A DNA stretch of 64,000 nucleotides from positions 1-64,000 of the IMG/VR virus record IMGVR_UViG_3300020442_000005; one strand, given 5' to 3'. Positions 1-52,577 of the stretch are shown in pieces (the stretch's first letter is position 1; every line of letters starts with the position of its first letter). The translations under genes and the position numbers were made by a program. The notes below the pieces were generated by a model. The model did not search any database. It was not told where the DNA came from and was given only the letters and a program-made list of their open reading frames with translations.

Positions 1-540
1 GATCTTACCGTAGTTAATGATGCCGCGACAGCCTTAAATGAGTATGAGGACATGAGATATAGTTCCGTATTGCCCAGGATACCAACCGTCGTAGTTTCTG
101 ATTCGTATAACACGAGAAATCCACGCAAAGAAACATATAAAGACGGAACTGAGATGATACACATTGTTCGCAAACTGCCAAATGTTGTTGCATATATTCA
201 GACTACAAAAGGCAGAGAGGTCAAATCGCGTGATGAGTGGAACAAATTAATGCAGGGAAGACAACCAACTGGCGAGCTGACTTCTACAGACATCCCGCTG
301 AAATCGACAAAACTTTCACGATATGGCGCGCCAATTGCAAAGGTAATTAGAAAAGCACAGCAAGAAACTCGTACATATGATGAAATTGCGGTATACGCAG
401 ATATTAAACCGGCCATAAATAAGTTTTCCGGCAAGGCACGAAAGTGGGGCGGCGAAGTTCGTTACACTTTCTTTATAATCGTACCAAAAGAAACTTATGT
501 GCCAAGATCTAAGTTGAAAACTAAGAGAAAGTCGAAATGA
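1..540 (+). CDS. Hypothetical protein, 5'-truncated (frame is open from base 1: DLTVVNDAATALNEYEDMRY...)
   Basis: Frame 1 has no stop from 1 to 540; its stop overlaps the next ATG (ATGA). Confidence 0.7.
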   Translation, partial: DLTVVNDAATALNEYEDMRYSSVLPRIPTVVVSDSYNTRNPRKETYKDGTEMIHIVRKLPNVVAYIQTTKGREVKSRDEWNKLMQGRQPTGELTSTDIPLKSTKLSRYGAPIAKVIRKAQQETRTYDEIAVYADIKPAINKFSGKARKWGGEVRYTFFIIVPKETYVPRSKLKTKRKSK

Positions 541-23228: not shown

Positions 23229-23260
23229 ATGGGGGAGGCTAGTCCTCCCCCATTGTGTTT
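23229..23260 (+). terminator. Hairpin terminator
   Basis: ATGGGGGAGG-CTAGT-CCTCCCCCAT then TGTGTTT. Confidence 0.75.
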
Positions 23261-23274
23261 ATTGGAGAATACAT

Positions 23275-28120: not shown

Positions 28121-28143
28121 GCAATAGTTATATTTGGTGACAT

Positions 28144-28527: not shown

Positions 28528-28536
28528 AAACCGTGA

Positions 28537-28565
28537 ATGTAAAACCTGTTAGTCATGTATATAAT
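28537..28565 (+). promoter_or_regulatory. Promoter ATGTAA-N17-TATAAT
   Basis: Perfect -10 box, 17-nt spacer, upstream of the helicase. Confidence 0.7.
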
Positions 28566-28589
28566 GTACATGTACAAACAGGAGCAAAT

Positions 28590-30194: not shown

Positions 30195-30196
30195 TC

Positions 30197-31357
30197 ATGA
30201 AAAAAAGTCAAGAATTAGACAAAAAACTGTTAAAAATTCTTCAAAATGAATCAAACAGACAGCACGAAATGCATAACTTTATAGCATCAGAGAATTTTTC
30301 ATCTGATCAAGTTCGCCGCTTCGTTGGTTCGAAGTTTACGAACAAGTATGCTGAAGGGTATCCTGGAAGACGGTATTATAACGGCTGCGAAAACTATGAT
30401 GAGCTAGAAAAGTATGCAAATGGATTGCTTAAAAATTTATACGGATGCAAATTTGCAAATGTACAGCCTCACTCCGGGGCCAATGCAAACTTGGCAATAT
30501 ACAAAGCGTTTTTGAAACCGGGCGACAGAACGCTTGGAATGGACTTAACCGCTGGTGGACATTTATCCCATGGATCTGGAGCAAATTTATCTGGCCAGTG
30601 GTTTGATGCACACTTCTATAACGTTGGAAACCTAGGTTGGCTAGACTATGATATCATAAGAAAAACAGCGAAAGAAGTTCAGCCAAGATTAATTGTTGCC
30701 GGCGCATCAGCATATCCCCGACAGATCGATTGGCTAGCTTTTCGACACATTGCTGATGAAGTCGGCGCATACCTTTTGGTTGATATGGCACACTACAGTG
30801 GTCTCATAGCCGGCAACGTTTATCCTAATCCAGTGCCGTATGCTGATTTTGTAACATCGACAACACATAAGACTCTACGTGGGGCACGTGGTGGAATGAT
30901 ACTGTGGAATAATCCAGACTATCGAAGAAAAATAAACTCAGCTGTTTTTCCTGGCACTCAGGGCGGTCCTCTTATGAATCAAATAGCTGGGAAAGCGCAA
31001 GCATTTTTTGAGGCATCCCAACCGGCATTTAAAGAATATGCTCAGACGGTCATCGATAACGCCAAAGTCATGGTACATACTTTTCATTCGAATGGAATTC
31101 AAATGTCGACAAACGGTACGGACTCTCACATAATCCTAATCCATACGGGAGATAAAACCGGAAAGGATGTTGCCAATGAACTTGAGCAAAAGCATGGTAT
31201 AGTGTGTAACAAAAACACTGTTCCAAATGATCCAAGGTCGGTTATAGAGACGTCTGGCATTCGAATTGGAACTGCCGCAATGACAACTCGAAAGGGTGCT
31301 GACTACGATTATTTCAAAAACATTGCAACAATAATCTCAAAAGTCATAAAGGAGTAA
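30197..31357 (+). CDS. glyA: Serine hydroxymethyltransferase
   Basis: IASEN, YAEGYPGRRYY, QPHSG, GGHLSHG, DMAH, TTHKTLRG, FPGTQGGP. Confidence 0.97.
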   Translation: MKKSQELDKKLLKILQNESNRQHEMHNFIASENFSSDQVRRFVGSKFTNKYAEGYPGRRYYNGCENYDELEKYANGLLKNLYGCKFANVQPHSGANANLAIYKAFLKPGDRTLGMDLTAGGHLSHGSGANLSGQWFDAHFYNVGNLGWLDYDIIRKTAKEVQPRLIVAGASAYPRQIDWLAFRHIADEVGAYLLVDMAHYSGLIAGNVYPNPVPYADFVTSTTHKTLRGARGGMILWNNPDYRRKINSAVFPGTQGGPLMNQIAGKAQAFFEASQPAFKEYAQTVIDNAKVMVHTFHSNGIQMSTNGTDSHIILIHTGDKTGKDVANELEQKHGIVCNKNTVPNDPRSVIETSGIRIGTAAMTTRKGADYDYFKNIATIISKVIKE

Positions 31358-34293: not shown

Positions 34294-35454
34294 ATGTCAA
34301 GTGTATTTTCGCATCACAAAACAGTTGCAGATCGATCTGCGTCTGATAGGCGGCGTCATAAGAAAAAAATAGAAGAAGCCATTAAGGATGGTATACACGA
34401 CATTGTCGCAGAAGAGTCTATTATAGGACAGGATGGGAAGAAAAAAATAAAAATTCCTGTTCGCGGTATTAAGGAATATAAGTTTGTATATGGTTCGAAC
34501 AATTCCGGAACAGGTGCCGGTGGCGAACATGACGTCAAAAAAGGCCAAGTTTTAAAGAAAGGACAGAAAAAACAGCAGCAAGGCCAAGGTGACAAACCTG
34601 GAAATCAGCCCGGGCAGGAATATTATGACGTTGAAGTCACACTAGAGGAATTGGCAGATTACCTGTTTGCTGATCTAGAGTTGCCAGAGCTAGAGAAAAA
34701 ATCATTAAAACAAATCGTTGCTGAAAAGTGGAAGCGTAAAGGATACAGACCGCAGGGCATAAGACCTAGACTTTCGAAAAAAGAAACAGCAAAGCAGCGC
34801 ATACGAAGAAAGAAAGCGGCAGAGCGCGCGTCTAGCATAGACCCAGATGAGCCGTTTTCATTTATCGAATCTGATCTGAGATACAAGCACATTACAAAAA
34901 CCGAGAAGAATATCTCAAACGCTGTAATATTTTTTATTATGGATGTATCCGGATCCATGTCAAAGGACAAGAAATATTTGGCAAGGAGTTTCTTCTTCTT
35001 GCTATATCATTTTATAAGATCGAAGTATGAAAAAACGGATCTAGTCTTTATAGCACATGATACTAGACCCTATGAGGTAGATGAGGACAAGTTTTTCAAC
35101 AGAGGTACTGGCGGTGGTACTATGGTATCTCCTACCTTGGAATATGTTTTAGAGGCAATCAATAAAAGATATGATCCATCAGCATGGAACATATATGCTT
35201 TCCATTGTTCAGACGGAGATAATTGGTCGTCCGATAACGACAAAACCTTAGAGCTGACGCTAAAAATAGCAGACATATGTCAATTGTACGGCTATTGCGA
35301 AATTGATCCGATGGAAACGGTTGCTTGGCTCAAATCCGACAACTCTCTAGGAGCGCTCTATGACAAAATACATTCAGTCAAATCAGCATTCATCAATTCA
35401 AAAAAAGACGTCTGGCCGGCCTTCAAAGAGTTTTTTGGAAAAACATCCAGTTAA
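34294..35454 (+). CDS. yeaH: YeaH/YhbH (DUF444) vWA protein
   Basis: DRRRH..KI, MDVSGSM, FIAHDT, GGGT.VS, YAFHCSDGDNW. Confidence 0.93.
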   Translation: MSSVFSHHKTVADRSASDRRRHKKKIEEAIKDGIHDIVAEESIIGQDGKKKIKIPVRGIKEYKFVYGSNNSGTGAGGEHDVKKGQVLKKGQKKQQQGQGDKPGNQPGQEYYDVEVTLEELADYLFADLELPELEKKSLKQIVAEKWKRKGYRPQGIRPRLSKKETAKQRIRRKKAAERASSIDPDEPFSFIESDLRYKHITKTEKNISNAVIFFIMDVSGSMSKDKKYLARSFFFLLYHFIRSKYEKTDLVFIAHDTRPYEVDEDKFFNRGTGGGTMVSPTLEYVLEAINKRYDPSAWNIYAFHCSDGDNWSSDNDKTLELTLKIADICQLYGYCEIDPMETVAWLKSDNSLGALYDKIHSVKSAFINSKKDVWPAFKEFFGKTSS

Positions 35455-35704
35455 AGAATCGACATTAGTAAGATTTGGATGGTATTACAGAAACAAACCC
35501 ATTCCGGATGATGAGACAAAAATAATTGGAGTGGTTTTAGATTCTCCAGAATGGAGATATTTTAGATACGAGAAGTTAAGTTTTTCAAAAGGAAAATGGT
35601 GTATTATTGAAAAAGAAGAGAACACATTAGTTGTTTGCGTTTATACACTGCATGGTGAGTTTGTATACTATCCATTATATAATTTGATAAAGGTTGAGGA
35701 ATGA
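35360..35704 (+). CDS. Small hypothetical protein inserted between yeaH and spoVR (true start uncertain)
   Basis: Fills the 35455-35708 gap; aromatic-rich. Confidence 0.55.
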   Translation: MTKYIQSNQHSSIQKKTSGRPSKSFLEKHPVKESTLVRFGWYYRNKPIPDDETKIIGVVLDSPEWRYFRYEKLSFSKGKWCIIEKEENTLVVCVYTLHGEFVYYPLYNLIKVEE

Positions 35705-35708
35705 AAAA

Positions 35709-36992
35709 ATGAGCGATTGGAATCTACGTGATCTTGAAAAATGGGATGAAGAGATTTGTAAAATAGCAAAGGACCATGGTTTAGATTGGTATCCAATAAC
35801 GTATGAAACATGCGATTATTATGAAATGATTGGCAACATGTCATACCACGGCATGCCGACACATTATGGCCACTGGTCATTTGGTAAATCTTTTGAGATA
35901 CAACATTCACAGTACCAGCATGGTGTGACTGGATTGCCTTATGAGTTGATTATAAATTCTGATCCTTGCATTTCTTACTTAATGCGTGAGAATCCACTAT
36001 ATTTACAGATATTGATTATGGCTCACTGCGTTGGCCACAGTGATTTTTTCAAAAAAAATCGAATGTTTGGATTTACCCGAGCTGATACAGTTGTACCGAG
36101 AATGAGAAACGCAAAAAAGAGAATTCAAAAATATGTCGAAGATCCATGGATCGGTATTGAAAAAGTCGAAAAAGTGATAGATGCCTGCCAAGCTCTTTCA
36201 TATCAGGTACCTAGGCACCCCAAAGACGTTGTTTCTCTTAAGGAAGAGTACGAAGCTGATAAAATAGTAAACAAAAAAGCAGAACTAGAAAAGCCACCAT
36301 ACAAAGAGTATGATATATTAGGGTTCGTGCTAGATTTTGCAACAGACTTGCCAGAGTGGAAAAGGGATATCATATCAATTGTTCGTGATGAAGCTTATTA
36401 TTTTATGCCGCAAATAAGAACAAAAGTTATGAATGAAGGTTGGGCATGTTTCTGGCATTACAAAATCGTACATGAACTGAATTTACCGCAAAAGTATCAC
36501 ATTCCTTTTTTAAAATCTCATAATCAAGTTGTAAGACCACACGTTGGAAGAATCAACCCTTATCATTTGGGCTTTCATTTGTTTAACAAAATAGAAGAAA
36601 GACACGGCCTGAAGGAATGTTTTATTGCCCGTGAAGTCCATAATGATGAGTCTTTTATAAGACAATATCTGACACAAGAAGATTGCGAAGAACTTAATCT
36701 ATTTTCATATTCTAAAAACGATATTAATGATTTAGTTGTCGACGAAGTATCAGACTATGATGGTTGGAAAACGGTTAAAAACAATTTAATAAACCAGATT
36801 GGTTCGAACTCAATTCCGGTAATTTATGTAGAATCGATCGAAAAAGACAATACACTAATACTACACCATGAACACGACGGACGTGACCTACAGATTCAGT
36901 ATGCTGAACATGTTTTAGAACATTGTAAACATCTGTGGCAATCTGATGTAAGATTAATAACAATGCTTGACGAAGCACCATACGAAATTTAA
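35709..36992 (+). CDS. spoVR: SpoVR/YcgB family protein
   Basis: GMP.HY.HWSFGK, LPYELIINSDP, AH..GHSDFF, TKVMNEGWA, NPY.LG. Confidence 0.95.
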   Translation: MSDWNLRDLEKWDEEICKIAKDHGLDWYPITYETCDYYEMIGNMSYHGMPTHYGHWSFGKSFEIQHSQYQHGVTGLPYELIINSDPCISYLMRENPLYLQILIMAHCVGHSDFFKKNRMFGFTRADTVVPRMRNAKKRIQKYVEDPWIGIEKVEKVIDACQALSYQVPRHPKDVVSLKEEYEADKIVNKKAELEKPPYKEYDILGFVLDFATDLPEWKRDIISIVRDEAYYFMPQIRTKVMNEGWACFWHYKIVHELNLPQKYHIPFLKSHNQVVRPHVGRINPYHLGFHLFNKIEERHGLKECFIAREVHNDESFIRQYLTQEDCEELNLFSYSKNDINDLVVDEVSDYDGWKTVKNNLINQIGSNSIPVIYVESIEKDNTLILHHEHDGRDLQIQYAEHVLEHCKHLWQSDVRLITMLDEAPYEI

Positions 36993-37003
36993 GGGAGCAA
37001 ATA

Positions 37004-38929
37004 ATGTCGTCTAATTTTTTAGATATTATTAAAAAACAAAGAAAAAAATCAAAGGACAAGAAGTTCGAGGGAACGTTTCTGGAATATCTAGAGCTAGTTC
37101 GTGAAAACCCAGACATCGCAAAGCATGCGCATAAAAGATTGTATGATGCTATAAGAAGCCAGGGAGTACGAGAAATTTCAGATGAAGATCCACGTAAACG
37201 AAAAATTTTCGATAACGAGGCTGTTAGAGTATATGAATACTTCGACAAAGAATTCTTTGGAATGGAATCGGTCATTGAAAAGATTATGCGTTTTCTTAAA
37301 GGAGCTTCCTTACGCGGTGAAGAGTCACGACAAGTGCTTTTGCTGATGGGACCGGTTGGAGCGGGTAAGTCTGCTTTGACAGAACATATCAAGTCAGCGC
37401 TGGATGGTTTATCTTACTACCATCTAAAAAATGATCCGCAGCGAGGAGAACCACTACAATTGTTGCCAAGGTCTCTTCGAAAGCAGTTTGAAGATCTGTT
37501 GAGTGTAAAGATCGATGGAGACATATCTCCTGTTGCAAGATGGAATCTCCTAAATGAATATAGTGGCAAATACGAGAACTTCGATGTAGTCCAGTCGACT
37601 TTTTCTCAAAGAGGGCGCCGCGGCATTGCCTCTGTTCCACCTATGGATGCAAATTCTCAAGACGTCTCTGTGTTAATTGGAAGTGAAGACATATCTAAAC
37701 TTGATAAGTTCTCTGAGGACGATCCTCGTGTGCTTAATCTAACCGGTGCCTTTAACGTTGGGAATCGGGGACTAGTTGAACTGATTGAGGTATTCAAGAA
37801 TGAGATCGAGTTTTTACACACTATTATTACGGCAACGCAGGAAAAACGCGTTCCTGCTCCGGGTAAGCATGATATGGTCTTCTTTGATGGTGTTATCCTG
37901 GCTCACTGTAATGAAAGCGAATGGAATCGATTTAAGTCAGAGCATACCAACGAGGCAATCCTGGATCGTGTTGTTAAGATCAACGTCCCATACGTGTTAG
38001 AGCTTGACCAAGAAGTAAAAATTTACGAAAAAATACTTTCAAAGTCAGACTTCAAAGCGCATATAGCTCCGCATACTATCAAAGTGGCTGCAATGTTTTC
38101 CGTCATGTCGCGACTTAAGTCAACCGGAAAATGTGACTTGCTAACAAAGATGAAAATCTACAACGGCGAAGACGTGATTGAAAAGGGTAGAGTAAAGAAA
38201 ATTGATATAATGGATCTGAAAGAGGAAGTCCGAGACGAAGGGATGACCGGCATCTCTACAAGATTTATATCAAAGGCAATTGACCACGCGTTAACTGATC
38301 ATTCTAAGCAATGTGTTACTCCTATCGGCGTGATGAAATCGCTCACTAAAATGGTAAAAGAGCAGATAGTTGATAATGACTTCCGTGAGCACTGCCTTGA
38401 AATCATTCAGAAGATTGTCAGAGAAGAATATCTTCGCATCCTAGAAACAGAGATTGCAAAGGCATTTATCACTGCGTATGAGGAACAAGCTCAGTCACTT
38501 TTTGACACTTATCTTGACAATGCAGAAGCCTATACGACTAAGAGAAAAATAAGAGATGATGTTACGGGCGAAGAAAGAAACGTCGATGAAAAGTTTATGA
38601 AATCAATTGAAGAAGTAATCGGCATCACTGGATCTTCTCGTCAAGGATTTAGATCTGATGTGACAGCTTACATGTTTGCAAAAATCAGGCACGGCGAAAA
38701 AGTCGATTATACTTCATATGAGCCGTTGAAAGAAGCAATCGAAGCATACCTTATAAACTCGGTAAAAGATATGGCTAGAATTGTTACTAAATCAAAATCA
38801 CGTGATGACGACCAAAAGAAAAAGTATAGCGATATGGTAGAAACACTTATTGAAGAATACGGATACAACGAACATAGTGCCGAAGAGATTCTACGTTATG
38901 CATCTAATAATCTTTGGAGAGATTCCTAA
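37004..38929 (+). CDS. prkA: PrkA/YeaG AAA+ ATPase (serine kinase family)
   Basis: FFGME.VIEKI, GPVGAGKS, G.FNVGNRG, EAILDR, GISTRF. Confidence 0.95.
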   Translation: MSSNFLDIIKKQRKKSKDKKFEGTFLEYLELVRENPDIAKHAHKRLYDAIRSQGVREISDEDPRKRKIFDNEAVRVYEYFDKEFFGMESVIEKIMRFLKGASLRGEESRQVLLLMGPVGAGKSALTEHIKSALDGLSYYHLKNDPQRGEPLQLLPRSLRKQFEDLLSVKIDGDISPVARWNLLNEYSGKYENFDVVQSTFSQRGRRGIASVPPMDANSQDVSVLIGSEDISKLDKFSEDDPRVLNLTGAFNVGNRGLVELIEVFKNEIEFLHTIITATQEKRVPAPGKHDMVFFDGVILAHCNESEWNRFKSEHTNEAILDRVVKINVPYVLELDQEVKIYEKILSKSDFKAHIAPHTIKVAAMFSVMSRLKSTGKCDLLTKMKIYNGEDVIEKGRVKKIDIMDLKEEVRDEGMTGISTRFISKAIDHALTDHSKQCVTPIGVMKSLTKMVKEQIVDNDFREHCLEIIQKIVREEYLRILETEIAKAFITAYEEQAQSLFDTYLDNAEAYTTKRKIRDDVTGEERNVDEKFMKSIEEVIGITGSSRQGFRSDVTAYMFAKIRHGEKVDYTSYEPLKEAIEAYLINSVKDMARIVTKSKSRDDDQKKKYSDMVETLIEEYGYNEHSAEEILRYASNNLWRDS

Positions 38930-39111
38930 TGACTAAAATTACGATAGGCATGCCTGAGTTTTTACTTGCATATAGTTTTTGTATGTACAACGTCTCATGG
39001 GGATTGTCCGTTTTAACGCTTACAATTGCGGTAATCAGCAGATTAGCAAGCACACTGGTGGATTATGGTGACAAAAAACAAGATGGTTTGGTCAGCGACC
39101 AAATCAAATGA
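38929..39111 (+). CDS. Small membrane protein
   Basis: TAATG coupling; hydrophobic core. Confidence 0.55.
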   Translation: MTKITIGMPEFLLAYSFCMYNVSWGLSVLTLTIAVISRLASTLVDYGDKKQDGLVSDQIK

Positions 39112-40297
39112 TTTCGAAAACATAGTTCATGATATAAAAAAGCTTTCCACTTCTGGAATATACTCATCACAAAACGTGTTTTTCAAGAACGATGTTTTTA
39201 ATTACATACGTTCCCTAGAGTCCGATTCAAGTCTGGACTATGCAAAAAGAAACATCATTCTTGATACACTGCTTTGCGCAAGAAAATACTCACCCGGAAC
39301 AGAAGTATTGTTGGCTGATATGATTGTATCAGCCGACTCTTATAACAACGAAAGAGTGTGTCGAATAAGTTCCGGCGAAGCTGCCAGTCTTACAAAGTCA
39401 AAGATTCAAAATCGGGAAGCCCAGCGTATATTTCAATCGATAGTTGATTTAATGGGTACTACTGGGCGTATTCATATCACTGAAGAACCCATCGCGTCAA
39501 CAGAGATTAAGCTCAGTGAAGGATGCGAAATAAACATTACGATAGACCATAGATTTGCGGCTCAGTCAAATGTAAAAAATATAAAATTTGATTTTGTTAA
39601 AGTATGCATTATTGAAGGCGCACCAGCTTCAGTTTCTGAAATAAATAAACTTCTTACTCACTGTCATGAAAACAACACGGTGCTTCTTCTGTTAGCAAGA
39701 TCTTTTCCAGAAGAAGTAATCAACACCTTATCAGTTAATTGGAACAGCAAAAAACTGAGGGTTATGCCCTACGTATATGGTGACAGCGTTTACAATATTA
39801 ATTCACACGCAGATCTCGCTGCGGTGTCCGGTGCCATTCCTGTATCGCAAATGTTTGGTGATTCACTGTCTTCAGATTTAACAGAAAAATTTGGTTCACT
39901 GTTGCAGTTTGTTAACCACGGAAAAAAAGTAACAGCCAGACCGACCTGTGATCCAAAAAGATTAATCAATGACTTAAAAACAAAATTGAGTAAGGTCGAC
40001 TGGTCAAATCATGACAGTGTTGAAATTATAACCAGAAGAATATCGGCATTATCAGACAAAACTTTGTATGTGAAAATTGCAAAATCACAAGAATCCTGGC
40101 GAATAAAAAATGAAGTAGATATTGCAATTGCTCAGTACAACAGCTATTGTAGGAAGACAATTGTCGTAAAAAGAAACGGAAAATTAGAAAAATTACCTTA
40201 TGACATTTACAAAAAAGCAACCGAACTGCAGAATACTTTTAGAACGCTGACAGAAAAAATAGGTGGCTTTATTGTTTACTGTGATAAAAAACATTGA
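39065..40297 (+). CDS. Divergent, shortened GroEL-like chaperonin
   Basis: IVDLMGTTGRIHITE..EIKLSEG ~ GroEL AMDKVGKEGVITVED..ELDVVEG; apical LLLLARSFPEEVINTLSVN; DLAAVSGA. Confidence 0.75.
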   Translation: MVTKNKMVWSATKSNDFENIVHDIKKLSTSGIYSSQNVFFKNDVFNYIRSLESDSSLDYAKRNIILDTLLCARKYSPGTEVLLADMIVSADSYNNERVCRISSGEAASLTKSKIQNREAQRIFQSIVDLMGTTGRIHITEEPIASTEIKLSEGCEINITIDHRFAAQSNVKNIKFDFVKVCIIEGAPASVSEINKLLTHCHENNTVLLLLARSFPEEVINTLSVNWNSKKLRVMPYVYGDSVYNINSHADLAAVSGAIPVSQMFGDSLSSDLTEKFGSLLQFVNHGKKVTARPTCDPKRLINDLKTKLSKVDWSNHDSVEIITRRISALSDKTLYVKIAKSQESWRIKNEVDIAIAQYNSYCRKTIVVKRNGKLEKLPYDIYKKATELQNTFRTLTEKIGGFIVYCDKKH

Positions 40298-40339: not shown

Positions 40340-40567
40340 ATGCCAAAAACAAAAGAACAGACAGCAAAAGAAAACGCTGTAAAAACATATCGTGAAGTAT
40401 CTGCAGTTTTTAAAACCAATCTTATTCAAGATGTAAATACAGCATTTACGCAGGGTACGGTAAACATTGAGGACAATGAAAAAGACAGATTTCTAAGTTT
40501 GTTGAGTAATCTTATTGATGTACATCAAGCCAATGGCCACGAGCAATTTACACGACTCAACAAATAG
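40340..40567 (+). CDS. Hypothetical protein
   Basis: AAGGAG RBS. Confidence 0.7.
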   Translation: MPKTKEQTAKENAVKTYREVSAVFKTNLIQDVNTAFTQGTVNIEDNEKDRFLSLLSNLIDVHQANGHEQFTRLNK

Positions 40568-40575
40568 ATAATACA

Positions 40576-41034
40576 GTGGAAGGGTACAAGCATCTTATAG
40601 AATGTCATTGCGTTTTACCGCAATACAGAAGCGCAAAAAATCCGCCATGGCATAAATTTGTTGTATTCAGTACAATTGATGATGGTGATACTGTAGTACC
40701 AAAGCATGCAAAATGCAACAACTGTGGTGTAGTTCACAACGTGTTCGATATAGGTAAATCTGAAATACTTCCAGGCCAAGAAACAGGGGCAGTTATGGAT
40801 ATTGATGATGTGAAAATAATGATGCCGGATTCTCTAAATAGAATGTTGTCAACATACAACTGCGATATCGCTACGTGGGAAAATGTGCTTTTTGTTTTAC
40901 AGCATAATAAGTTCCCAAGTAGTATAGTTTTAGATAGGAACGAAGAGAATGGTGTAATTTCCGGAAAAATACTGGATATGAAAGATTACGCAGTGTACTC
41001 TATAAGGCCATATTCTGGCAAGGTTGAGACATGA
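40576..41034 (+). CDS. Hypothetical protein with possible Zn ligands
   Basis: CHC ... CNNC..H; GTG start. Confidence 0.7.
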   Translation: MEGYKHLIECHCVLPQYRSAKNPPWHKFVVFSTIDDGDTVVPKHAKCNNCGVVHNVFDIGKSEILPGQETGAVMDIDDVKIMMPDSLNRMLSTYNCDIATWENVLFVLQHNKFPSSIVLDRNEENGVISGKILDMKDYAVYSIRPYSGKVET

Positions 41035-41273
41035 AAAGATTAAATAAAAATGACGAATTAGAGATTGAAGACAGATCAAAAGCTAGAGAAATTATACAGG
41101 TAATTTTGGATTATGGAATCAACCAGAACCAAATTTATCACATGATTTATTTATTGGCTTTAGAGCTGGAAAAAGTTGACGACATGAAAGATATTACAAA
41201 GTTGGTAACAAAGTTAACAAACACAACAAACAACAAAACAACTGGTCTTATAACAACAGGAGATGAACCATGA
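41031..41273 (+). CDS. Hypothetical helical protein
   Basis: ATGA coupling on both sides. Confidence 0.7.
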   Translation: MKRLNKNDELEIEDRSKAREIIQVILDYGINQNQIYHMIYLLALELEKVDDMKDITKLVTKLTNTTNNKTTGLITTGDEP

Positions 41274-41467
41274 GTAATCCAGTAATTGAAAAATGGCAAG
41301 AGCTAAAAGTTCTTATGGAATCTATCGATTTAGATGTACATAAAAACGCAAACGGAAATGCATCCGCCGGCGTGCGTGCACGCAAAGGCCTAAGATTGCT
41401 TAAAACGCAAGCTGCAGATTTAGTTAAGCTTACTGTCGAATTAGACAAGGCAAAAAAAACTAAGTAA
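41270..41467 (+). CDS. Histone H1-like Hc1-family small protein
   Basis: GNASAGVRARK motif, basic, 65 aa. Confidence 0.75.
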   Translation: MSNPVIEKWQELKVLMESIDLDVHKNANGNASAGVRARKGLRLLKTQAADLVKLTVELDKAKKTK

Positions 41468-41519
41468 GACTAAGTTTTTAGTCTTTGCAAATAAATGGAG
41501 ATCTTTGATCTCCATTTTT
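41466..41519. terminator. Tandem hairpins / bidirectional terminator between convergent genes
   Basis: AAGACTAA-GTTT-TTAGTCTT and AAATGGAGATC-TTT-GATCTCCATTT. Confidence 0.85.
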
Positions 41520-41544: not shown

Positions 41545-41799
41545 CTAACAATCGATCTTGAATACGTACTCTCGTATTTTTTTAAGAGCAGATTTTTCAA
41601 TTTGGCAAATGCGCATTCTAGTTAAACCACATAAATCACCTATCTGCTGCAAAGTCCTAGGACCTTCTCGAGACGCAATGATCGTACAATTATTAAACTG
41701 TTTACATGCCATCCACTGTCGACAAGACTTGTTTTGGCATGATTTATTATTATTCAAATGCTCTTTGAAGCATGTTTTGTTATTTAAGACTTTATCCAT
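41545..41799 (-). CDS. Stand-alone sigma70 region-4 HTH protein with Cys-rich N-terminus
   Basis: RTLQQIGDLCGLTRMRICQIEKSALKKIR matches sigma r4 TLEE.G..F.VTRERIRQIE.KALRKLR; GGAGG RBS. Confidence 0.85.
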   Translation of the reverse strand: MDKVLNNKTCFKEHLNNNKSCQNKSCRQWMACKQFNNCTIIASREGPRTLQQIGDLCGLTRMRICQIEKSALKKIREYVFKIDC

Positions 41800-41859: not shown

Positions 41860-43218
41860 ATGAGTAGAAAAATATTCGTTGTTGATACATCAGTTATGCT
41901 TTATGATAAGCTAGCAATTCATCAGTTTAATGGTAACGACATTGTACTACCACTTTGCATTCTGGAAGAACTCGATAAGTTCAAAGAAAAAAGTGGACTC
42001 CTTGGAGAATCCGCGCGATATGTAAATAGATACTTAGATGCACTCAGAGACTCTGAAAAAGATTCTGCGGCATGGAGCATCTCCCCAGAAAACGACATTA
42101 GATATAAATTTGTTACAAAATCATTAAAGTCTTTTATTCCGGAAGGTCTAGACACAAGCTACACAGACAATCAAATAATCGCATGCGCAAAATACTTAAA
42201 AGAAATGCATCCAAACAAGGTCGTCTTAGTTATCACTAAAGACATAAATCTTCGTGTAAAATGTGATGCTGTGGGTGTCGTTGCTGAAGATTATTTTAAA
42301 GACCACATTGAATCCGACGTAAAATCGTTGCGTGGCTATAGAGAGATAGAGGTAGATTCGACTGTTATCGATGAGTTTTACTCAGAGGGAAGTGTGAAGA
42401 TTGACTGTGAAGCCGATCAAAAAATAGAGGAAAATTGTTTTGTGATTGCAAAATCCAACTCTGGATCAGGTCAATCTTTTTTGGGAATCAACAAAGGTTC
42501 TAGTATTAAAAAACTAAACTATGAAATGAACGGCTTTATAAGTGTAGAGCCAAGAAATTCAGAGCAACGTTTTGCAATAGAGGCCTTACTTGATCCAAGC
42601 ATTTCACTTGTAACATTAACTGGCTTGGCAGGTTCCGGAAAGACTTTTTTGGCACTTATGGCTGGATTATACAAGTTACAAAACAGCAATCGCGGCGTAG
42701 GTGGTATCAAAATACCAGAAGAATTTGCTAACTTTTCAGACAATTATGACAGATTAGTAATTACTCGGACGTTGCAGCCTGTTGGTCGTGATTTAGGATA
42801 TTTACCTGGTAGCATGGAAGACAAAATGCAGCCATGGCTAATGCCCATACTAGATAACGTACGTCATGCATTTAAGGATATATCATATTTTAAAATGATG
42901 ATAGACAATGGCGAAATTGAAGTTGCTCCTATTCCATATATCAGAGGTCGTACTTTCACAAATTCTCTAGTATTGGTTGACGAAGCACAAAACGCAACAA
43001 TACATGAGCTCAAAACTATTATTACGCGTATAGGATCGGGATCAAAAATAGTATTACTAGGGGACATCGATCAAATCGATACGCCATATATTGACAGACA
43101 GTCTTCGGGTTTGAGCATAGTTATAGACAAGTTTCGTAATTCAAAATTGGCTGCTCACGTCAATCTGTCAAAAGGTCAAAGATCTGATTTGGCATCTGCC
43201 GCGGGTATGATTCTGTAA
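41860..43218 (+). CDS. phoH: PIN-PhoH ATPase (PhoH2/YlaK-like)
   Basis: VVDTSV, TKDINLRVK, GLAGSGKT, IRGRTF, DEAQN, GDIDQID. Confidence 0.93.
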   Translation: MSRKIFVVDTSVMLYDKLAIHQFNGNDIVLPLCILEELDKFKEKSGLLGESARYVNRYLDALRDSEKDSAAWSISPENDIRYKFVTKSLKSFIPEGLDTSYTDNQIIACAKYLKEMHPNKVVLVITKDINLRVKCDAVGVVAEDYFKDHIESDVKSLRGYREIEVDSTVIDEFYSEGSVKIDCEADQKIEENCFVIAKSNSGSGQSFLGINKGSSIKKLNYEMNGFISVEPRNSEQRFAIEALLDPSISLVTLTGLAGSGKTFLALMAGLYKLQNSNRGVGGIKIPEEFANFSDNYDRLVITRTLQPVGRDLGYLPGSMEDKMQPWLMPILDNVRHAFKDISYFKMMIDNGEIEVAPIPYIRGRTFTNSLVLVDEAQNATIHELKTIITRIGSGSKIVLLGDIDQIDTPYIDRQSSGLSIVIDKFRNSKLAAHVNLSKGQRSDLASAAGMIL

Positions 43219-43875: not shown

Positions 43876-46800
43876 ATGTCAAAAGATTTTAGAATCAAAC
43901 AATTGCGTACGACTCAGGTCATAGTATCGGGATCCGCTGTAGGAACTACCCCGAGTTTGCTAATTTATTCAGCATCGGCTGCAACCAATCTAGATGGAGG
44001 CGTTCATGCAGATTTGCTGACGTCAGTAGGAAAAGATGTCTGGATGTTTGTATCTGGTGCAAAAAACGACTCAGATCAGGCCCAAACGCTACACAGTGAC
44101 AAGATTTTATTCGGCGGTGACGTTGTTATATCGGGTACTCTATACGCTGAAAAACAAGTTTTAGAAGTTGATTATTCTCAAAAATCCGATCTTTTTCTAT
44201 CTGGCGCAATCGTATTCGGAGACCAAGGTGCCGCCGGCCAAGATGCTGGACAGGCAAGATTGCTAGAGTCGGTTGGTAACAATTCAGGTTCGTTGTTTAT
44301 ATCGACTGGATCTTTATATTTAGGCCTTAAATCATCCGGAAATTACGCAGAAACAGAGTTAACTCCTAAGGTTTATGTGGCCGCTAACGGTTTGGGAGAG
44401 CAAGTCGCGACTGCGACAAATACGTCTTTTAATCTAGATATTAACAATCTCACCGGATCTCTTACGCAGGCAACTATAGCTTCTGGTGATTTATTCGCAG
44501 TAGCAGATATTAATGCCGTAAATAACGAATCTAAAAAAATTACACTTGCAAACGTTGCACTTAAGCTTGCCGGCACCGGTTTAGAAGCGACGGATGGAGT
44601 GGTCGCAGTAGACCTGAACGATTCTGGCGCTGGAACGATCAATCTAACAAATGATAGTATTGTATTTATTGATGCAGATGATTCGAACGCAACGAAAAAA
44701 CAGACAATAAGTGCGGTTGCGACAGCCCAGGCCGGAGACGGAATACAGGCCACAAACGGTGTTTTTGCTGTTGACGTTTCTGATTTTGCTGGTGACGGAT
44801 TGTCCGATGACGGTTCAGAAAATTTAAAAGTCGATCTCAACTCGCTAGCCACATCCGCAGCAATTAACCAAGCAGATTCAATTGCGTTCATTGACTCAGA
44901 CAATGTAACTAAAAAGGGCACAATCGATTCTCTTGTAACGGCAATTGCAGGATCTGGATTATCAAACACATCAAGTCAGCTAGCTTTAACAAGTAACGAA
45001 GTGACTGTCACGGCTGGTGACGGACTAAAAGGAGGAGGTGGCGTCAGCCTCGGAGGTTCCGTAACAATAAACGTTGAACCCAATGATTTTGCTGGTACTG
45101 GCCTAGAAGATGACGGATCGGACAATTTGCGAATAGCCGCTTCAGCAGCGGGTGACGGTCTAAGCGGTGGAGGTGGATCTGCTCTTGCTGTCTCTACGGG
45201 AACTGGCCTTAAAATCGTTGGTGATAACGTCGCGACCGACGATAGTGTAGTTGCACATCTGACTGGATCAGTTTTTACAGGTGTTGTTCAGTTTGACAAT
45301 ACCGTAAATGTCGCAGCTGATATTGCACATGCTGGTGGCGATACAGACACAAAAATTACATTTAATACCGATAGAGTGACTGTAACTGCAGGAAATGTAA
45401 ATGCGATTGACGTTATTGAGGACGGTTCGAATTCAGAAGTGGTTATCAACGAAACTGGTGATGCTACAATGGATTTTAGGGTCGAAACAGACAATCTGCA
45501 AAAGGCAATCTACACTAATGCCGAAATGGATTATGTGACCATAGGGGATGACGTCGGCGTAAAACAGGACATGCATCTGTTTGTTTCGGGTACCATCGGA
45601 GGTGTCGGTACCGAAGGTGTCGCTGTATTCGGAGGCGACGTTGTAGTAAGCGGTTCATTACTTGATGGTAGTCATAATCCAATAAAATTGTTGTCCTACA
45701 ATGAAAACGGTACATTCACAACTCCTCCAAATGCCACCGGGACAAATGCCGTTGCGATAGGTAATAACGCTGTTGCTAGTGGAAACAACTCTATAGCAAT
45801 GGGTACAAGCACGACAAACCAAACAGACGCTACAGGGATTCACTCACTAGCGATTGGAGGTGACGATGCAACAGCTTCCGGCCAGTATGCTTCCGCGATT
45901 GGTGGTTATCAAAATACATCCAGTGGAAATTATTCCGTCACTATGGGTCGCGGGAACACAGCTTCGGAATCTGATGCAATTGCAATTGGTAAGTCACTAA
46001 CCGTTAATACCGCTGACACTATAGCTATTGGAAACAGTTCAGACAATGCATCCATACAACTAAAGGGCAACGTTGCTGTCGAGGGAACATCAACTTTGGA
46101 AGGAGACGTAACCCTTGGTAATACTGCTGATTTAATTATTCCTACGTTTATAAAACACAAATCAGATCTTAATACTTATATTCAGTATAACACTGACCGT
46201 ATAAGACTGGTTACTAATGGTGCAACAGATGTCGACATTACGACAAATCAGATTTTACTCACCCCTGGAGCTGACGGTACACCAACAGAATCAGCAGGTT
46301 TGGACGTCGCATTTTATGTCTCTGGTTCTGTCGCCACTCAAGGTACCACAGTCCGGGCAACATCACTCTTCGGTGGCGATGTGCACGTCTCTGGTTCTTT
46401 ATCTGGGCCTGACTCCTTTACTTTTGGAAACGATAACACAAGGATATTTAGAGACGGCAATAATCTAAAATTTGATGATGGCAACAACACAGTAAAAACA
46501 TTATCAGAACTAGCAACCGTTCCGGGCGAAGGTGCATTTATAAATGGCGTACACGGTGGTTCAAATAACTCTAAAGCCGCAACCTCAGCATCGTTTGCGA
46601 TTGCTGGAACTCAGGGTGCTAGCTTCTATACTGAAAACATCGGATCTGATGTTTTGTTATATGTTTCTGGTGGTTTAAGATCTGATACTGCTGCATACGG
46701 AAAGACCGCGGCCGTGTTTGGCGGAGCAGTTGTGTTCTCAGGTTCAGCAACATATCTTGGTGAAACTAGTTTTAACGTTATAGAAGCAACGACTGCAATA

Positions 46801-49800
46801 AAAACACCGTCGATACAAGATGCATCTGGAAACGAATCGATTAGAATTAATTCACAAAAAGTTGCGGTGGGTAATGCTATCAATGCAAATCCAAGTGCTA
46901 TATTTGAAGCTCCCCTAGCTGATAATACTCAGGCTGCAGCAACAAACGAAATTAGTAACTTTAACATCTTCCTAAACAACAGATCAGTACAAACAAATGC
47001 CTTTGCCGGAATAGGTTTCGATGTGTCGACAGAAGTCGACGCTGATTCTATTGGCGCTGCAATTAGAGCCGAAAGAGACACGTCGGCTAGTACCACGGCC
47101 GCAAATCACGCTACAAACTTGACATTTGCTACAAACCCAAATACCGGGGATGATGCTCTTACTGAAAGAATGCGTATTACTCATGATGGAAAGGTTGGTA
47201 TCGGTGTTGATCCAGGTTACGCTCTAGATGTTTTTGGTGACGTACGTATCCGTGGTAATGATTTAAGAGATAATAGTGGTGCAGTGTTTATCAGTGCAGA
47301 CGGCAGCGCAAACACAACCGTTTCGTTGGATCTTACTGTCGCCGGCGGTAATATTTTTGGACCACCCACCGGTGACTTAAACATTAAATCCGACGGAAAT
47401 CTTACTTTTGTCCTAGATAACGATAACAATGAAACGTCCCAAAGACTATTGGTTCAAAACACATCAAGCGACATATTTGAAGTAACTGAAGCGGGAGATG
47501 TTGTTGTTGGTAACGACTTATTCGTTTATGGCAACGATATAAAGGATTCCGGGGATCACACTGTGATCACATTCAACGGCCTAGGAGAGACGTCAATAGG
47601 TAACCTCACCATCACCGGTTCGAACTTGGTTGTTGGTCCAGATGCTGATGGCGCCGATCGATCTATTGTGTTTGGTCATTCTACACTAAAATCAATCATG
47701 GGTATTGACGACGATCAAGATGTGTTTGCCATTAATACTGATGCAACGTTCGAATCTGTAAATGATTTTGAGATAGACGCATCAGGTAACGTTACAATAG
47801 GTAATGGCGATCTTCAAATCGGCGGCGATGATATTAAGGATTCAGGTGGAAATATAGCAATATCCTTCGACGGATCTGGTGCCATAGACAACAACGCTTC
47901 TTTCAGCGGAATTGTTGAGTTTACACGTTCAGGGCCAGGTTCCAATCCTGCCTCTATTAAGTTGGCAAAAGGTATAGGTAGTACAGACGAAGCAACCACT
48001 TTAATAGCTGTAAATGGCGACTCTGGAAGAAATATTGAACTACTTCCCGCAGGCATTAACTTCTTGAAGTGTAAAAACCCATCTTCTAGTCAGAAAGAAA
48101 TTGTTATCAACGATGACAGCAGCGACATTGACTTCAGGGTTGAATCTAACGCCGAAACACACATGTTTTTTGTTGATGGCGGCACGGATAGAGTAGGTAT
48201 TGGTATAGACGGTCCAACGACTACGCTTGAGATTAAGGGAGCAAACGCTGACGAGACTGCAGTTCAGATTAAAGATTCTCAAAGCTCAGATACAATTATA
48301 AAACTACATCACGAAAACGGTGAAGACGACGGTGTACTCGATCTATACGTTAACGGGACTGCAAACACAAGATTGCATGGAAACGGTACATTGAGTGTTG
48401 CTTCTGGAAATCTAACGCTAGAAACTACTGGAACTGATTCTGATATTATTTTCAAAGTCGATGATAATACTACTGAGTTTACGGCGTTAACAATCGATGG
48501 ATCAGACCTCGGAAGTTTATTACATACTCCGTTGGATGGCGGCTCTTTGCAGGTAAACGACACCGGTACTGACGGTTTCTCCGAGGTTAATGGAAACGGT
48601 GGATTGAATCTATATAGATATTCAGACAGTGCTTCTTCGACAGCGACTGTTAATTTTTATAAGGCTCGTGGCAATGAATCATCACAATCAGCATTAAGCA
48701 CAGATGACACAATTGGATCGCTTACCTTCTTTGGTTACGATACCGCTGCATCTGCAGCTGCGCGTATACAAGTGAAAGCCGCGGATGCTCATGGATCTCT
48801 CGGTGATACAACAGACTCCCCAGGAAAGATATTATTCCAAACAGTTCCAAATGGTAGTAGCACACTAACAGACGCTCTATTAATTGGTTCTGACCAGTCA
48901 TCAACTATTTACGGTGATATATTTTTGCCACAGACAAGTACTATCGACACTACCGGTAACCTAACTATCGAAGCATCCGGAGACATCAAGTTTACGCATG
49001 ACGGTACTCAATTCATGCAGATTGAAGATTTCACCGGTGACGTTGCGATTGGATCACACGATCCGACCGTTAGGCTTGACGTTGAAGATACTACAACAGG
49101 CTACGTAGTTGAGTTTAATAACGGAAGTACATCTTCCGGATGCGATATGTTGCTGATGAAATTTACCGGTGTAGTGAATCCTGGAGGTACTATAATAAGA
49201 GCTATCGGCTCAGCCTCTGGCCAGGTATACGCAGTCAACGGCGACGGCGACGGTACCAGTACAGTGTCTACGACGTTTACCGGATTCCATGATACTGCAA
49301 CACTTTCCTCTGATGATCTAATACCTGGAATGATTGTTGAGTCGACTGGAATTCCTTGGGTTAAGGATCCGACAAATAACTACCATAATATGCTGCCATA
49401 TACTAGAATATGCGCATCAAACGGATCATCAACTGTTTTTGGTGTAACTGCAAAGGACAATGCGCTCGATATATATGACGAGAATGATGATAAAATACCT
49501 AATCCAAATTTGGGCGGACTAAGACCAGGATGCTTCCCAGCGCTTTCGACAAACAATCCAATGGCATCTAATCATGAACATCTGTCTGTTATGTCACTGG
49601 GCGAAGGTGCAATCTGGGTAACAAACATAGCTGGAAATATAACAAATGGGGATTTGATTGAATCGTCTGAGATCGCTGGTTACGGAAGATTGCAGCCTGA
49701 TGACATTATGAGATCTAAAACAGTTGCAAAGTGTACAGAAGCAATTGACTGGGATTCGGTCTCCGCAGTTATCGAACATAATGGCCAAACTTACAAAAAG

Positions 49801-52568: not shown

Positions 52569-52577
52569 TAGGTAGAC

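What the first reader, a model, noticed from the sequence alone, without database searches (positions are those of the whole stretch)
39065..40297. Apparently ATPase-dead, truncated GroEL homologue
It aligns by eye with the GroEL intermediate and apical domains. The GDGTTT phosphate loop is replaced by SPGTEV, the catalytic VEDAL (Asp398) reads VDIAI, and roughly 100 C-terminal equatorial residues are missing (410 aa). No groES is nearby. Inference: an ATP-independent holdase/minichaperone, a subunit that reprograms host GroEL rings, or a chaperonin fold repurposed as a structural protein.
Basis: partly seen in the sequence, partly recalled or inferred. Interest (0 to 1): 0.66.

Follow-up and report, generated by a model that had tools for sequence, protein, structure and literature searches.

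The report
Short ATP-site-less GroEL paralogue in phage
A marine T4-like jumbo phage that has its own normal GroEL also carries a second, stripped-down GroEL relative without the ATP-binding site or the ring-to-ring contact surface, and this relative belongs to a large viral protein family that I found described nowhere.

Summary
The ORF at 39065..40297 (+, 410 aa) is real, under purifying selection, and a true GroEL homologue. The AF2 model matches GroEL over its whole length (Z 23.4) and profile alignments reach 97-100% probability.

PGTEVL sits where GDGTTT should be, Asp398 is Ile, and the GGG loop and residues 479-481 are deleted.

The "C-terminal truncation" is wrong in detail. The 138 missing residues are mostly internal (GroEL 30-37, 100-103, 108-131, 415-419, 423-491) plus the flexible tail. 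They remove the whole inter-ring interface, while the N- and C-terminal strands remain.

New findings:
- The window is the start of a 273-kb marine T4-like jumbo phage that has an intact GroEL at about 205 kb and no detectable GroES or gp31.
- The short protein belongs to a large viral family (at least 150 clusters at 50% identity, none with GDGTTT). It has no Pfam hit and no match among cultured phages.
- All 5 near-complete genomes that carry a family member also carry a canonical GroEL.
- Conservation peaks on the apical helix H/I face.
- A small membrane-protein gene usually lies directly upstream and overlaps the start.

Best reading: a nucleotide-independent binding module (holdase or adaptor). 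Its partners are inferred, not shown.

The parts
39065..40297 (+). CDS of the short GroEL-like protein (410 aa plus stop)
   Evidence: ORF. 25 homologues of about 400-420 aa found by word search. GroEL fold over the whole length. dN/dS 0.16 against a 96%-identical relative.
39065..39352 (+). Reduced N-terminal equatorial segment (aa 1-96, equivalent to GroEL 1-133). It lacks GroEL 30-37, 100-103 and 108-131, the distal helix D/E hairpin.
   Evidence: Transitive hhalign mapping. Model secondary structure.
39293..39310 (+). PGTEVL (aa 77-82) in place of the GDGTTT phosphate loop. P77, G78 and E80 are invariant or nearly so in the subfamily.
   Evidence: VIA anchor of model 52 to chain 60 in 1sjp.
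39353..39517 (+). Intermediate domain, first segment (aa 97-151, equivalent to GroEL 134-190)
   Evidence: hmmsearch and hhalign alignments.
39518..40063 (+). Apical domain (aa 152-333, equivalent to GroEL 191-376)
   Evidence: Isolated GroEL apical-domain structures align at Z 19-19.6, rmsd 2.6 A. The superfamily invariants G185, N225, N246, D250 and R325 lie here.
39605..39859 (+). Conservation peak (aa 181-265, equivalent to GroEL 221-305). It covers helices H and I and the following loops. Changes: L234->N194, L237=L197, L259->I219, V263->S223, V264=V224, N265=N225.
   Evidence: Sliding conservation. Residue mapping.
40064..40153 (+). Intermediate domain, second segment (aa 334-363). VDIAI lies here, with Ile353 (40121-40123) at the position of catalytic Asp398.
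40154..40294 (+). C-terminal equatorial remnant (aa 364-410, equivalent to GroEL 409-422 plus 492-524). GroEL 423-491 and the GGM tail are absent. P378 equals P496. The IGG strand replaces TEC.
38929..39111 (+). 60-aa membrane-protein gene. Its N-terminal motif MxKITIGMPEFLL is followed by a hydrophobic stretch. Its ATG overlaps the PrkA stop (TAATG) and its 3' end overlaps the GroEL-like start by 47 nt.
   Evidence: Sequence. Homologous ORFs with SD-like sites sit upstream of GroEL-like genes in L002, L003, L004, L006, L009, L010 and L012 and in several IMG/VR loci.
40340..41467 (+). Conserved downstream block: 75-aa, 152-aa (Cys4), 80-aa and Hc1-like 65-aa genes
   Evidence: Same order in L002, L003, L004, L006, L010, L016 and L075. 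The 152-aa gene lies 1.2-3.3 kb downstream of the GroEL-like gene in 5 divergent genomes. Hc1 Pfam hit.
41493..41517 (+). Terminator-like hairpin (11-bp stem followed by a T-run), probably the end of the transcription unit
   Evidence: This is a consensus scan only.
34294..38929 (+). Upstream DUF444/YeaH-like, SpoVR/YcgB-like and PrkA/YeaG-like genes. They are context only and specific to this subclade.
   Evidence: Pfam. Present next to the gene in L002, L003, L010 and L075. PrkA is absent from 5 other genomes of the clade.

Best explanation
The gene encodes a member of an old, fast-evolving, virus-borne branch of the group I chaperonin (GroEL) family.

Shown:
- It keeps the apical domain, the intermediate domain and a minimal equatorial base. 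The N-terminal strand, stem-loop, last helix and C-terminal strand are retained.
- It has lost the nucleotide pocket and every segment that makes GroEL's ring-to-ring contact.
- It therefore cannot work as an ATP-driven, double-ring folding cage.

Inferred:
- It most likely acts as a nucleotide-independent binding module, a holdase or adaptor. It would grip a specific partner or client through the strongly conserved helix H/I face of its apical domain.
- In this phage clade it probably works alongside the phage's own full-length GroEL, for example by holding or handing over phage clients such as the oversized 646-670-aa gp23-type capsid protein.
- It probably also works with the small membrane protein that is co-translated from the overlapping upstream gene.
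For: Homology and fold.

Loss of the ATP site and the inter-ring interface:
- Residue mapping: D87->G, T89->E, S151->I, D398->I, D495->L. The 30-33 loop, G415/416 and N479-A481 are deleted.
- A109, E434, R452, E461, S463 and V464 all fall in deleted segments.
- None of the 148 retrieved family representatives checked has GDGTTT.

A real, selected gene:
- dN/dS is 0.16.
- 1626 representatives score E<=1e-3 and 739 score E<=1e-10. The top 150 are all 505 aa or shorter.
- ESM Atlas clusters of 71-244 members are 94-100% viral.
- 54 IMG/VR contigs carry a relative.

Binding surface under selection: conservation peaks at aa 181-265, the helix H/I face. All superfamily-invariant residues are apical, and the equatorial remnant is least conserved.

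Link with canonical GroEL:
- The own genome has an intact GroEL.
- All four further records with CheckV completeness of 74% or more that carry the short gene also carry a full-length GroEL.
- Cpn10 occurs in only one of them.
- Their capsid proteins are 646-670 aa.

Membrane partner: a membrane-protein gene lies upstream and overlaps or abuts the GroEL-like gene in most loci. Two unrelated types occur.
Against: - No binding, oligomer or activity data exist.
- The co-occurrence with canonical GroEL comes from related T4-like jumbo phages. It may reflect shared ancestry rather than function.
- The two genes lie about 166 kb apart in this genome.
- The hydrophobic groove is only partly kept. Y199, Y203, L234 and V263 have become polar or small, which argues against a generalist holdase.
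- The upstream membrane gene is missing in some loci (L014, L015).
- The PrkA neighbourhood is subclade-specific.
- The hinge glycines G374/G375 are not kept, so GroEL-like domain movements may be absent.
- An unconventional nucleotide site cannot be ruled out from sequence alone.
Confidence: 0.5

Rival explanations
1. It is a dedicated partner of the phage's (or the host's) GroEL. It could be a subunit that inserts into GroEL rings, or a single ring that caps them. Either way it would change cavity size or substrate range, like a co-chaperonin derived from the chaperonin itself. This would let the phage fold its very large capsid protein without GroES or gp31.
For: - The elements that make GroEL's intra-ring beta-sheet are kept: the N-strand (aa 7-11), the stem-loop hairpin (32-39) and the C-strand (401-405). 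The inter-ring elements are deleted.
- All 5 near-complete genomes have both genes.
- No GroES or gp31 is found in the own genome or in the two 99-100% complete relatives.
- The capsid protein is 646-670 aa. From general knowledge of T4 gp23 and gp31, this is larger than the GroEL-GroES cage normally holds.
Against: - About a quarter of the chain, mostly equatorial, is missing, so a seamless fit into a GroEL ring is doubtful.
- The phage's canonical GroEL is 55-58% identical to cellular GroELs and could simply use host GroES.
- One relative (G006) does have Cpn10.
- The genes are not linked on the genome.
- No interaction test was run for this pair.
Confidence: 0.2
2. It is the soluble partner of the membrane protein encoded just upstream. 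It would hold, insert or gate that protein at the cell membrane, for example in a lysis-timing or membrane-remodelling function. On this reading it is unrelated to general protein folding.
For: - The upstream membrane-protein gene is conserved across members that share only about 20% identity, and it comes in two unrelated types.
- Type 1 (60-113 aa) is seen in the window and in at least 16 other loci. Type 2 (137-175 aa, C-terminal TM) is seen in at least 14 loci.
- The overlapping reading frames suggest coupled translation.
- Type 2 proteins weakly resemble holin and XhlA-like 'hemolysin' PHROGs (E 0.0037 and 3.5e-5).
Against: - The holin and XhlA similarities are weak.
- Some family members lack any upstream membrane gene.
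- Adjacency alone is weak evidence of binding.
Confidence: 0.2
3. It is a chaperonin fold reused as a structural or scaffolding component of the virion or of an intracellular assembly.
For: - It is a core-like gene of a clade with unusually large capsids.
- It lies 3.6 kb upstream of a 1985-aa fibre-like gene.
Against: - It is not in the structural gene block. The capsid and portal genes lie at 122-132 kb.
- Its neighbours are regulatory or metabolic: PrkA, PhoH, Hc1 and a sigma-like gene.
- No virion proteomics data exist.
Confidence: 0.05
4. It is a decaying GroEL pseudogene or a chance similarity.
For: No Pfam Cpn60 hit. Only 21% identity to the phage's own GroEL.
Against: - Intact ORFs of similar length occur in well over a hundred divergent clusters, with invariant residues.
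- dN/dS is 0.16.
- The structural match is Z 23.4.
Confidence: 0.01

Closest known systems
Canonical GroEL / Cpn60 (group I chaperonin, Pfam PF00118), including this phage's own GroEL at about 205 kb
   Same: Three-domain fold in the same order. The apical domain superposes at rmsd 2.6 A. Shared invariant residues are F204, L237, N265, D291, G318, R368, L372, P496, G170 and G173.
   Different: - 138 residues shorter.
- The ATP/Mg site is gone and the inter-ring interface is deleted.
- There is no GGM tail, and hinge residues G374/G375 are lost.
- It scores below Pfam detection.
- It is separated from all canonical GroELs, phage and cellular, by one branch of about 3.3 substitutions per site with SH-aLRT 100, in a quick unrooted tree.
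Phage-encoded chaperonins such as Pseudomonas phage EL gp146 (PDB 6tmt; PMC7185714)
   Same: A phage-borne GroEL relative that works without GroES and prevents aggregation without encapsulation (PMC7185714 abstract). The structural match is Z 18.4.
   Different: gp146 is full length (about 550 aa), hydrolyses ATP and switches between double and single rings (PMC7185714). The protein here lacks the ATP site and the inter-ring segments, and it sits beside a separate canonical GroEL in the same genome.
GroEL apical-domain 'minichaperones' (engineered fragments 191-376, e.g. PDB 1kid, 1fy9)
   Same: These provide a precedent that an isolated apical domain can bind substrates without ATP. The structures match the apical domain here at Z about 19.
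   Different: They are laboratory constructs. The natural protein here also keeps the intermediate domain and part of the equatorial domain, and several groove residues have changed.
Viral GroEL/GroES and thermosome-like genes of marine virioplankton (PMC5649160)
   Same: Marine phage origin. Some viral GroELs there also lack an adjacent GroES.
   Different: That survey took full-length GroELs (E. coli 8-514). For the putative co-chaperonin (GroES) sequences it states that those missing key functional regions were discarded. The short family is not described there. BFVD holds only full-length viral GroELs (511 aa or more) and thermosome-like proteins as structural matches.
Chaperonin-like proteins with degenerate ATP sites in cells (chlamydial GroEL2/3; eukaryotic BBS6/10/12; the Cpn60_TCP1-like domain of PIKfyve/Fab1). 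These come from my own knowledge and were not tested here.
   Same: The chaperonin fold is kept as a binding or assembly module with reduced or no ATPase.
   Different: They are cellular, mostly group II or full length. None is reported with the specific deletion of the inter-ring interface seen here.

Membership tests
Group I chaperonin (GroEL/Cpn60) | Equatorial-intermediate-apical three-domain fold | tested here: met
   VIA-align Z 23.4, 393 residues aligned, model 5..407 against 4v4o_G 3..527. Foldseek E 4e-21.
Group I chaperonin (GroEL/Cpn60) | Sequence membership by Pfam PF00118 at the gathering score | tested here: not met
   No PF00118 hit even at E<=10. Ten other family members also have none. 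Homology is seen only with PHROG 5725 and with profiles.
Group I chaperonin (GroEL/Cpn60) | Nucleotide site: GDGTTT (86-91), D52, S151, D398, GGG 414-416, N479-A481, D495 | tested here: not met
   PGTEVL replaces GDGTTT. D398->I, S151->I and D495->L. The 30-33 loop, 415-416 and 479-481 are deleted. Only the D52 position keeps D/N.
Group I chaperonin (GroEL/Cpn60) | Back-to-back double ring through equatorial contacts (A109, E434, R452, E461, S463, V464) | tested here: not met
   All these residues fall in segments with no counterpart, GroEL 108-131 and 423-491. The actual oligomer state could not be tested.
Group I chaperonin (GroEL/Cpn60) | Heptameric ring assembly | not testable with these tools
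   The strands that form the intra-ring sheet are present in the model, but no homo-oligomer prediction was possible.
Group I chaperonin (GroEL/Cpn60) | Hydrophobic helix H/I groove for substrate and the GroES mobile loop (Y199, Y203, F204, L234, L237, L259, V263, V264) | tested here: inconclusive
   F204, L237, L259 (as I) and V264 are kept. Y199->T/S, Y203->R, L234->N (invariant) and V263->S/A.
Group I chaperonin (GroEL/Cpn60) | Co-chaperonin (GroES/Cpn10 or gp31) partner gene | tested here: not met
   None in the 273-kb record, which is 82% complete. A host GroES cannot be excluded.
Phage EL gp146-type autonomous chaperonins | Full-length subunit with active ATPase and a double/single ring cycle | tested here: not met
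   410 aa, ATP-site residues lost. Structural similarity only, Z 18.4.
Short GroEL-like viral family (defined here) | About 360-505 aa, no GDGTTT, GroEL ~415-419 and most of ~439-487 deleted, invariant apical G185/N225/N246/D250 and R325 | tested here: met
   One clade against all canonical GroELs (quick tree).

The most novel reading that the evidence does not exclude
The short GroEL-like protein is an obligate, chaperonin-derived co-factor of the phage's own GroEL. It would form a capping or mixed ring that replaces GroES or gp31 and enlarges or opens the folding chamber for the 646-670-aa capsid protein. This would be a third kind of co-chaperonin solution, after GroES and T4 gp31, and it may be tethered to the membrane by its small partner protein.
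Probability: 0.12. Interest if true: 0.9.

Novelty: new variant of a known kind. Interest (0 to 1): 0.68.

Why it matters
GroEL is among the best-studied molecular machines, and its ATP site and double-ring design are usually treated as defining features. Here a natural and very diverse viral lineage has removed exactly those two features. It has kept, and strongly conserved, the apical binding face.

This lineage always sits beside a normal GroEL in large T4-like marine phages, and most of those phages lack a recognisable GroES or gp31.

If the protein is a passive holdase or adaptor, it is a natural counterpart of the engineered 'minichaperone'. If it works with the phage GroEL, it points to an unknown way of folding capsid proteins that are too large for the classical cage.

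Either way, the family is currently invisible to Pfam-based annotation. It has no Pfam hit and only a weak partial hit to the PHROG GroEL family, so it goes unrecognised in viromes.

Tried and rejected
- tblastn of the protein and megablast of the locus against 50,697 phage records found no match.
- tblastn with two more distant family members hit only canonical GroEL genes, weakly. No cultured phage is known to carry the family.
- The scan of genome contigs found no relative.
- BFVD fold search returned only full-length viral GroELs and thermosome-like proteins.
- Complex prediction for the GroEL-like protein plus the 60-aa upstream membrane protein scored 0.00. The verdict was 'no answer', so it counts neither for nor against binding.
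- The direct hhalign of the window subfamily against GroEL is reliable only for residues 66-343. Its forced global version misplaces the N-terminus. I therefore used the transitive route through the longer subfamily.
- The 152-aa downstream neighbour was folded to see whether it is GroES- or gp31-like. It is not. It matches no known fold (Foldseek E>0.29, best VIA Z 4.2).
- The T4 late-promoter motif TATAAATA occurs at chance level and not upstream of genes in this genome. The sigma-70 scan is also at chance level. Nothing can be said about expression timing.
- Reads: the DNA occurs in marine metagenomes of at least 10 studies. In one metatranscriptome library, two 151-nt contigs lie on 38819-39115 only. 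That does not show transcription.
- Alignments A4 and A5 were too diverse for the search for related loci.
- The 242-kb ENA contig behind L002 is not held, so co-occurrence there could not be checked.
- PrkA/SpoVR/DUF444 as functional partners: rejected as a general link, because PrkA is absent from 5 other genomes that carry the family.
- Literature searches found no description of a truncated or ATP-site-less phage GroEL paralogue.
Full report
**1. The observation**

The ORF 39065..40297 (+) is present and encodes 410 aa. It has no Pfam hit. It matches PHROG 5725 'chaperonin groEL' over aa 120-338 (E 1.3e-8) and PDB GroEL sequences (E 2.9e-4).

A word search found 25 homologues of about 400-420 aa from metagenomes, at 96-31% identity. 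Their alignment (A1) used as a profile hits PDB GroELs at E 4.5e-15, with profile positions 111-339 on GroEL 153-385.

An AlphaFold2 model built on A1 is confident (mean pLDDT 86.7). Foldseek gives E 4e-21 against Hsp60/GroEL. VIA-align gives Z 23.4 with 393 residues aligned, model 5..407 on T. thermophilus Cpn60 3..527. The best-fitting chains are GroES-bound, open-state subunits (rmsd 4.1-5.2 A). Apo-state chains fit at rmsd about 12-13 A. That is a property of a predicted model and I draw no conclusion from it.

The gene is under purifying selection. Against a 96%-identical relative (L075) there are 27 synonymous and 17 non-synonymous differences, giving dN/dS 0.16.

**2. Residue-level anatomy**

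The direct profile-profile alignment to GroEL is reliable only for aa 66-343 (Prob 96.5%). A bridge solved this.
- The big profile search returned many longer relatives of 455-505 aa.
- An alignment of 34 of them aligns end to end with canonical GroEL (Prob 99.7%, E 2.9e-25, 9-482 on GroEL 1-524).
- The same alignment aligns end to end with the window's subfamily (Prob 100%, E 7e-46).

Chaining the two gives the map. GroEL residues 30-37, 100-103, 108-131, 337-340, 415-419, 423-491 and 525-548 have no counterpart, a total of 138 residues.

So the protein is not C-terminally truncated. The last equatorial helix and the C-terminal strand are there, with P378 equal to P496 and the IGG strand at 399-401. 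The N-terminal strand and the stem-loop hairpin are also there.

What is missing:
- the 30-37 nucleotide loop;
- the distal half of the helix D/E hairpin;
- the GGG loop;
- the helices that follow the GGG loop and the 476-487 hairpin;
- the flexible tail.

All residues known to make GroEL's inter-ring contacts (A109, E434, R452, E461, S463, V464) lie in the deleted parts.

In the nucleotide site:
- G86-D87-G88-T89-T90-T91 corresponds to P77-G78-T79-E80-V81-L82.
- S151 -> I, D398 -> I353, G414 -> R and D495 -> L.
- 415-416 and 479-481 are deleted.
- Only the D52 position keeps D/N.

Hinge residue G192 is kept (G153). G410 is Thr in this protein but Gly in most of the wider family. G374/G375 are not kept.

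**3. Where selection acts**

In canonical GroELs the intermediate and N-equatorial parts are the most conserved. In this family the order is reversed. The apical domain is the most conserved and the equatorial remnants the least.

The peak is at aa 181-265, equivalent to GroEL 221-305. This covers helices H and I and the loops after them. It is the face that binds substrates and the GroES mobile loop in GroEL.

Across 135 divergent members the invariant positions are G185, N225, N246, D250 and R325. Nearly invariant are E192, T221, P235 and G265. All are apical.

The groove is only partly hydrophobic:
- F204, L237, L259 (as I) and V264 are kept;
- Y199, Y203, L234 and V263 have become T/S, R, N (invariant) and S/A.

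This looks like a specific binding surface rather than a general sticky one. That is an inference.

**4. Genome and family context**

- The window is the first 64 kb of a 273,025-bp IMG/VR virus record (CheckV 82%). Its DNA occurs in marine metagenomes of at least 10 studies.
- The phage is T4-like. It has a Gp23-type capsid gene in a 670-aa ORF and a T4-type portal.
- It has an intact GroEL of 529 aa with GDGTTT at 205120-206709. That protein is 55-58% identical to cellular GroELs and only 21% identical to the short protein over 168 aa.
- No co-chaperonin was found with Pfam Cpn10, PHROG GroES, PHROG gp31 or T4 gp31 itself.
- The exhaustive profile search found 1626 cluster representatives at E<=1e-3 and 739 at E<=1e-10. 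The 1626 probably include canonical GroELs.
- The best 150 are all 505 aa or shorter, and 128 of them are 360-505 aa. None of the 148 I retrieved has a GDGTTT-like motif. Ten sampled members have no Cpn60 Pfam hit and only apical/intermediate PHROG-GroEL hits.
- The ESM Atlas lists several clusters of about 400-434-aa viral 'hypothetical proteins' with 71-244 members.
- A quick ML tree puts all short proteins on one side, and all canonical GroELs, including the phage's own, on the other side of a single long branch (SH-aLRT 100, length 3.3). The phage's canonical GroEL nests among cellular ones. This was a quick search, unrooted, with long branches. The short protein is therefore not a recent duplicate of the phage's GroEL.
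- No cultured phage and no BFVD entry carries a short member. I found no paper describing one.

**5. Co-occurrence with canonical GroEL**

54 IMG/VR contigs carry longer-type relatives. Among the 15 contigs of 100 kb or more, a full-length GroEL (533-588-aa ORFs, 191-251 bits) is present in all four with completeness of 74% or more (81, 99, 74 and 100%). It is also present in one 35% fragment.

With the window's own genome, that makes five of five near-complete genomes carrying both genes. Cpn10 is present in only one of them and absent from the 99% and 100% complete ones. All have Gp23-type capsid ORFs of 646-659 aa.

These genomes are related, so this is not five independent observations.

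**6. Neighbours**

Immediately upstream lies a 60-aa ORF (38929-39111).
- Its ATG overlaps the PrkA stop (TAATG), and its end overlaps the GroEL-like start by 47 nt.
- It has a conserved N-terminus (MxKITIGMPEFLL) followed by a hydrophobic stretch.
- Equivalent ORFs with Shine-Dalgarno-like sites precede the GroEL-like gene in eight other loci. These include members that are only distantly related (P0171, P0186).
- In the IMG/VR loci the gene is preceded in at least 22 of 38 distinct cases by a membrane-protein gene of one of two types. Type 1 is as above. Type 2 is 137-175 aa with the 'LNGGFD' and 'IHxAIYDP' motifs and a C-terminal TM helix. Type 2 has weak holin and XhlA-like PHROG hits.
- Some loci have neither type.

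Downstream lies a 75-aa / 152-aa / 80-aa / Hc1-like block that is conserved. The 152-aa Cys4 protein is found 1.2-3.3 kb downstream on the same strand in all five divergent genomes. Its confident model (pLDDT 88) matches no known fold and is not GroES-like.

The DUF444-SpoVR-PrkA genes upstream are specific to the window's subclade. A terminator-like hairpin at 41493-41517 may end the unit.

**7. Interpretation**

Shown:
- a true, selected GroEL homologue;
- ATP site lost;
- inter-ring interface deleted;
- apical face most conserved;
- a large viral family;
- a canonical GroEL in the same genomes.

Inferred:
- It acts as a nucleotide-independent binding module.
- I put about 0.5 on that general mechanism. 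Within it, the partner could be the phage GroEL and its clients, the upstream membrane protein, or both.
- The rivals are a GroEL ring or cap co-factor (0.2), the soluble partner of the membrane protein with no folding role (0.2) and a structural protein (0.05). These are not mutually exclusive with the general statement and are separated by the experiments listed.
- A pseudogene or chance similarity is excluded.

**8. Verdict**

Its interpretation is partly supported. The finding is a new and widespread variant of the group I chaperonin family, with a clear and testable anatomy.

Noticed in passing
G000:C1:205120-206709 (outside the window; L001:1426-3015): Intact 529-aa GroEL with GDGTTT, 55-58% identical to cellular GroELs. 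It has no GGM tail and no adjacent GroES. A sigma-70-like gene lies just downstream.
   Followed up: yes
window 34294-38929: A complete YeaH(DUF444)/YcgB(SpoVR)/YeaG(PrkA)-like stress module in a phage. PrkA's stop overlaps the start of the small membrane ORF. The module is absent from five other genomes of the clade.
   Followed up: partly
window 40576-41034: 152-aa protein with invariant C10, C12, C47 and C50. It is syntenic with the GroEL-like gene across very divergent genomes. Its model is confident (pLDDT 88) but matches no known fold.
   Followed up: partly
window 41270-41467 and 41545-41799(-): A chlamydial Hc1-type histone H1-like protein (65 aa), and on the opposite strand an 84-aa protein that relatives' annotations call Sigma70_r4-like. 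A strong terminator-like hairpin at 41493-41517 lies between them.
   Followed up: no
window 41860-43218: PIN-PhoH fusion protein (452 aa), conserved next to the block in all related contigs.
   Followed up: no
window 12447-14744: Two adjacent histidine-kinase-like genes (HATPase_c, one with a PAS domain) in a phage genome.
   Followed up: no
window 22123-24931: A MoxR-type AAA+ ATPase (AAA_5) followed by a DUF2201 metallopeptidase/VWA protein. This is a second chaperone-like pair in the same phage.
   Followed up: no
window 25763-31357 and 49913-61183: Auxiliary metabolic genes: phosphomannomutase, serine hydroxymethyltransferase, several glycosyltransferases and a B12-binding radical SAM enzyme.
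   Followed up: no
window 43876-49833: A 1985-aa fibre-like protein. Its relatives carry weak YadA-head hits.
   Followed up: no
G000:C1:130630-132342 and equivalents in G006, G008, G009, G011, G013: The Gp23-type major capsid gene lies in an unusually long ORF (646-670 aa). The Pfam match is split, which suggests an inserted domain between profile positions about 80 and 115.
   Followed up: partly
L013, L033, L035, L037, L051-L053, L055, L058, L061, L063, L064, L069, L072 (upstream of the GroEL-like gene): A second, unrelated family of 137-175-aa tail-anchored proteins sits directly upstream of shorter GroEL-like genes. They carry 'LNGGFD..L..KV.KIE' and 'IH.AIYDP..GLY' motifs and a C-terminal TM helix. 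They have weak holin and XhlA-like hits.
   Followed up: partly
window 38819-39115: In one seawater metatranscriptome library, two 151-nt contigs cover the PrkA end, the small ORF and the GroEL-like start with 1-2 differences. This is not proof of transcription.
   Followed up: partly
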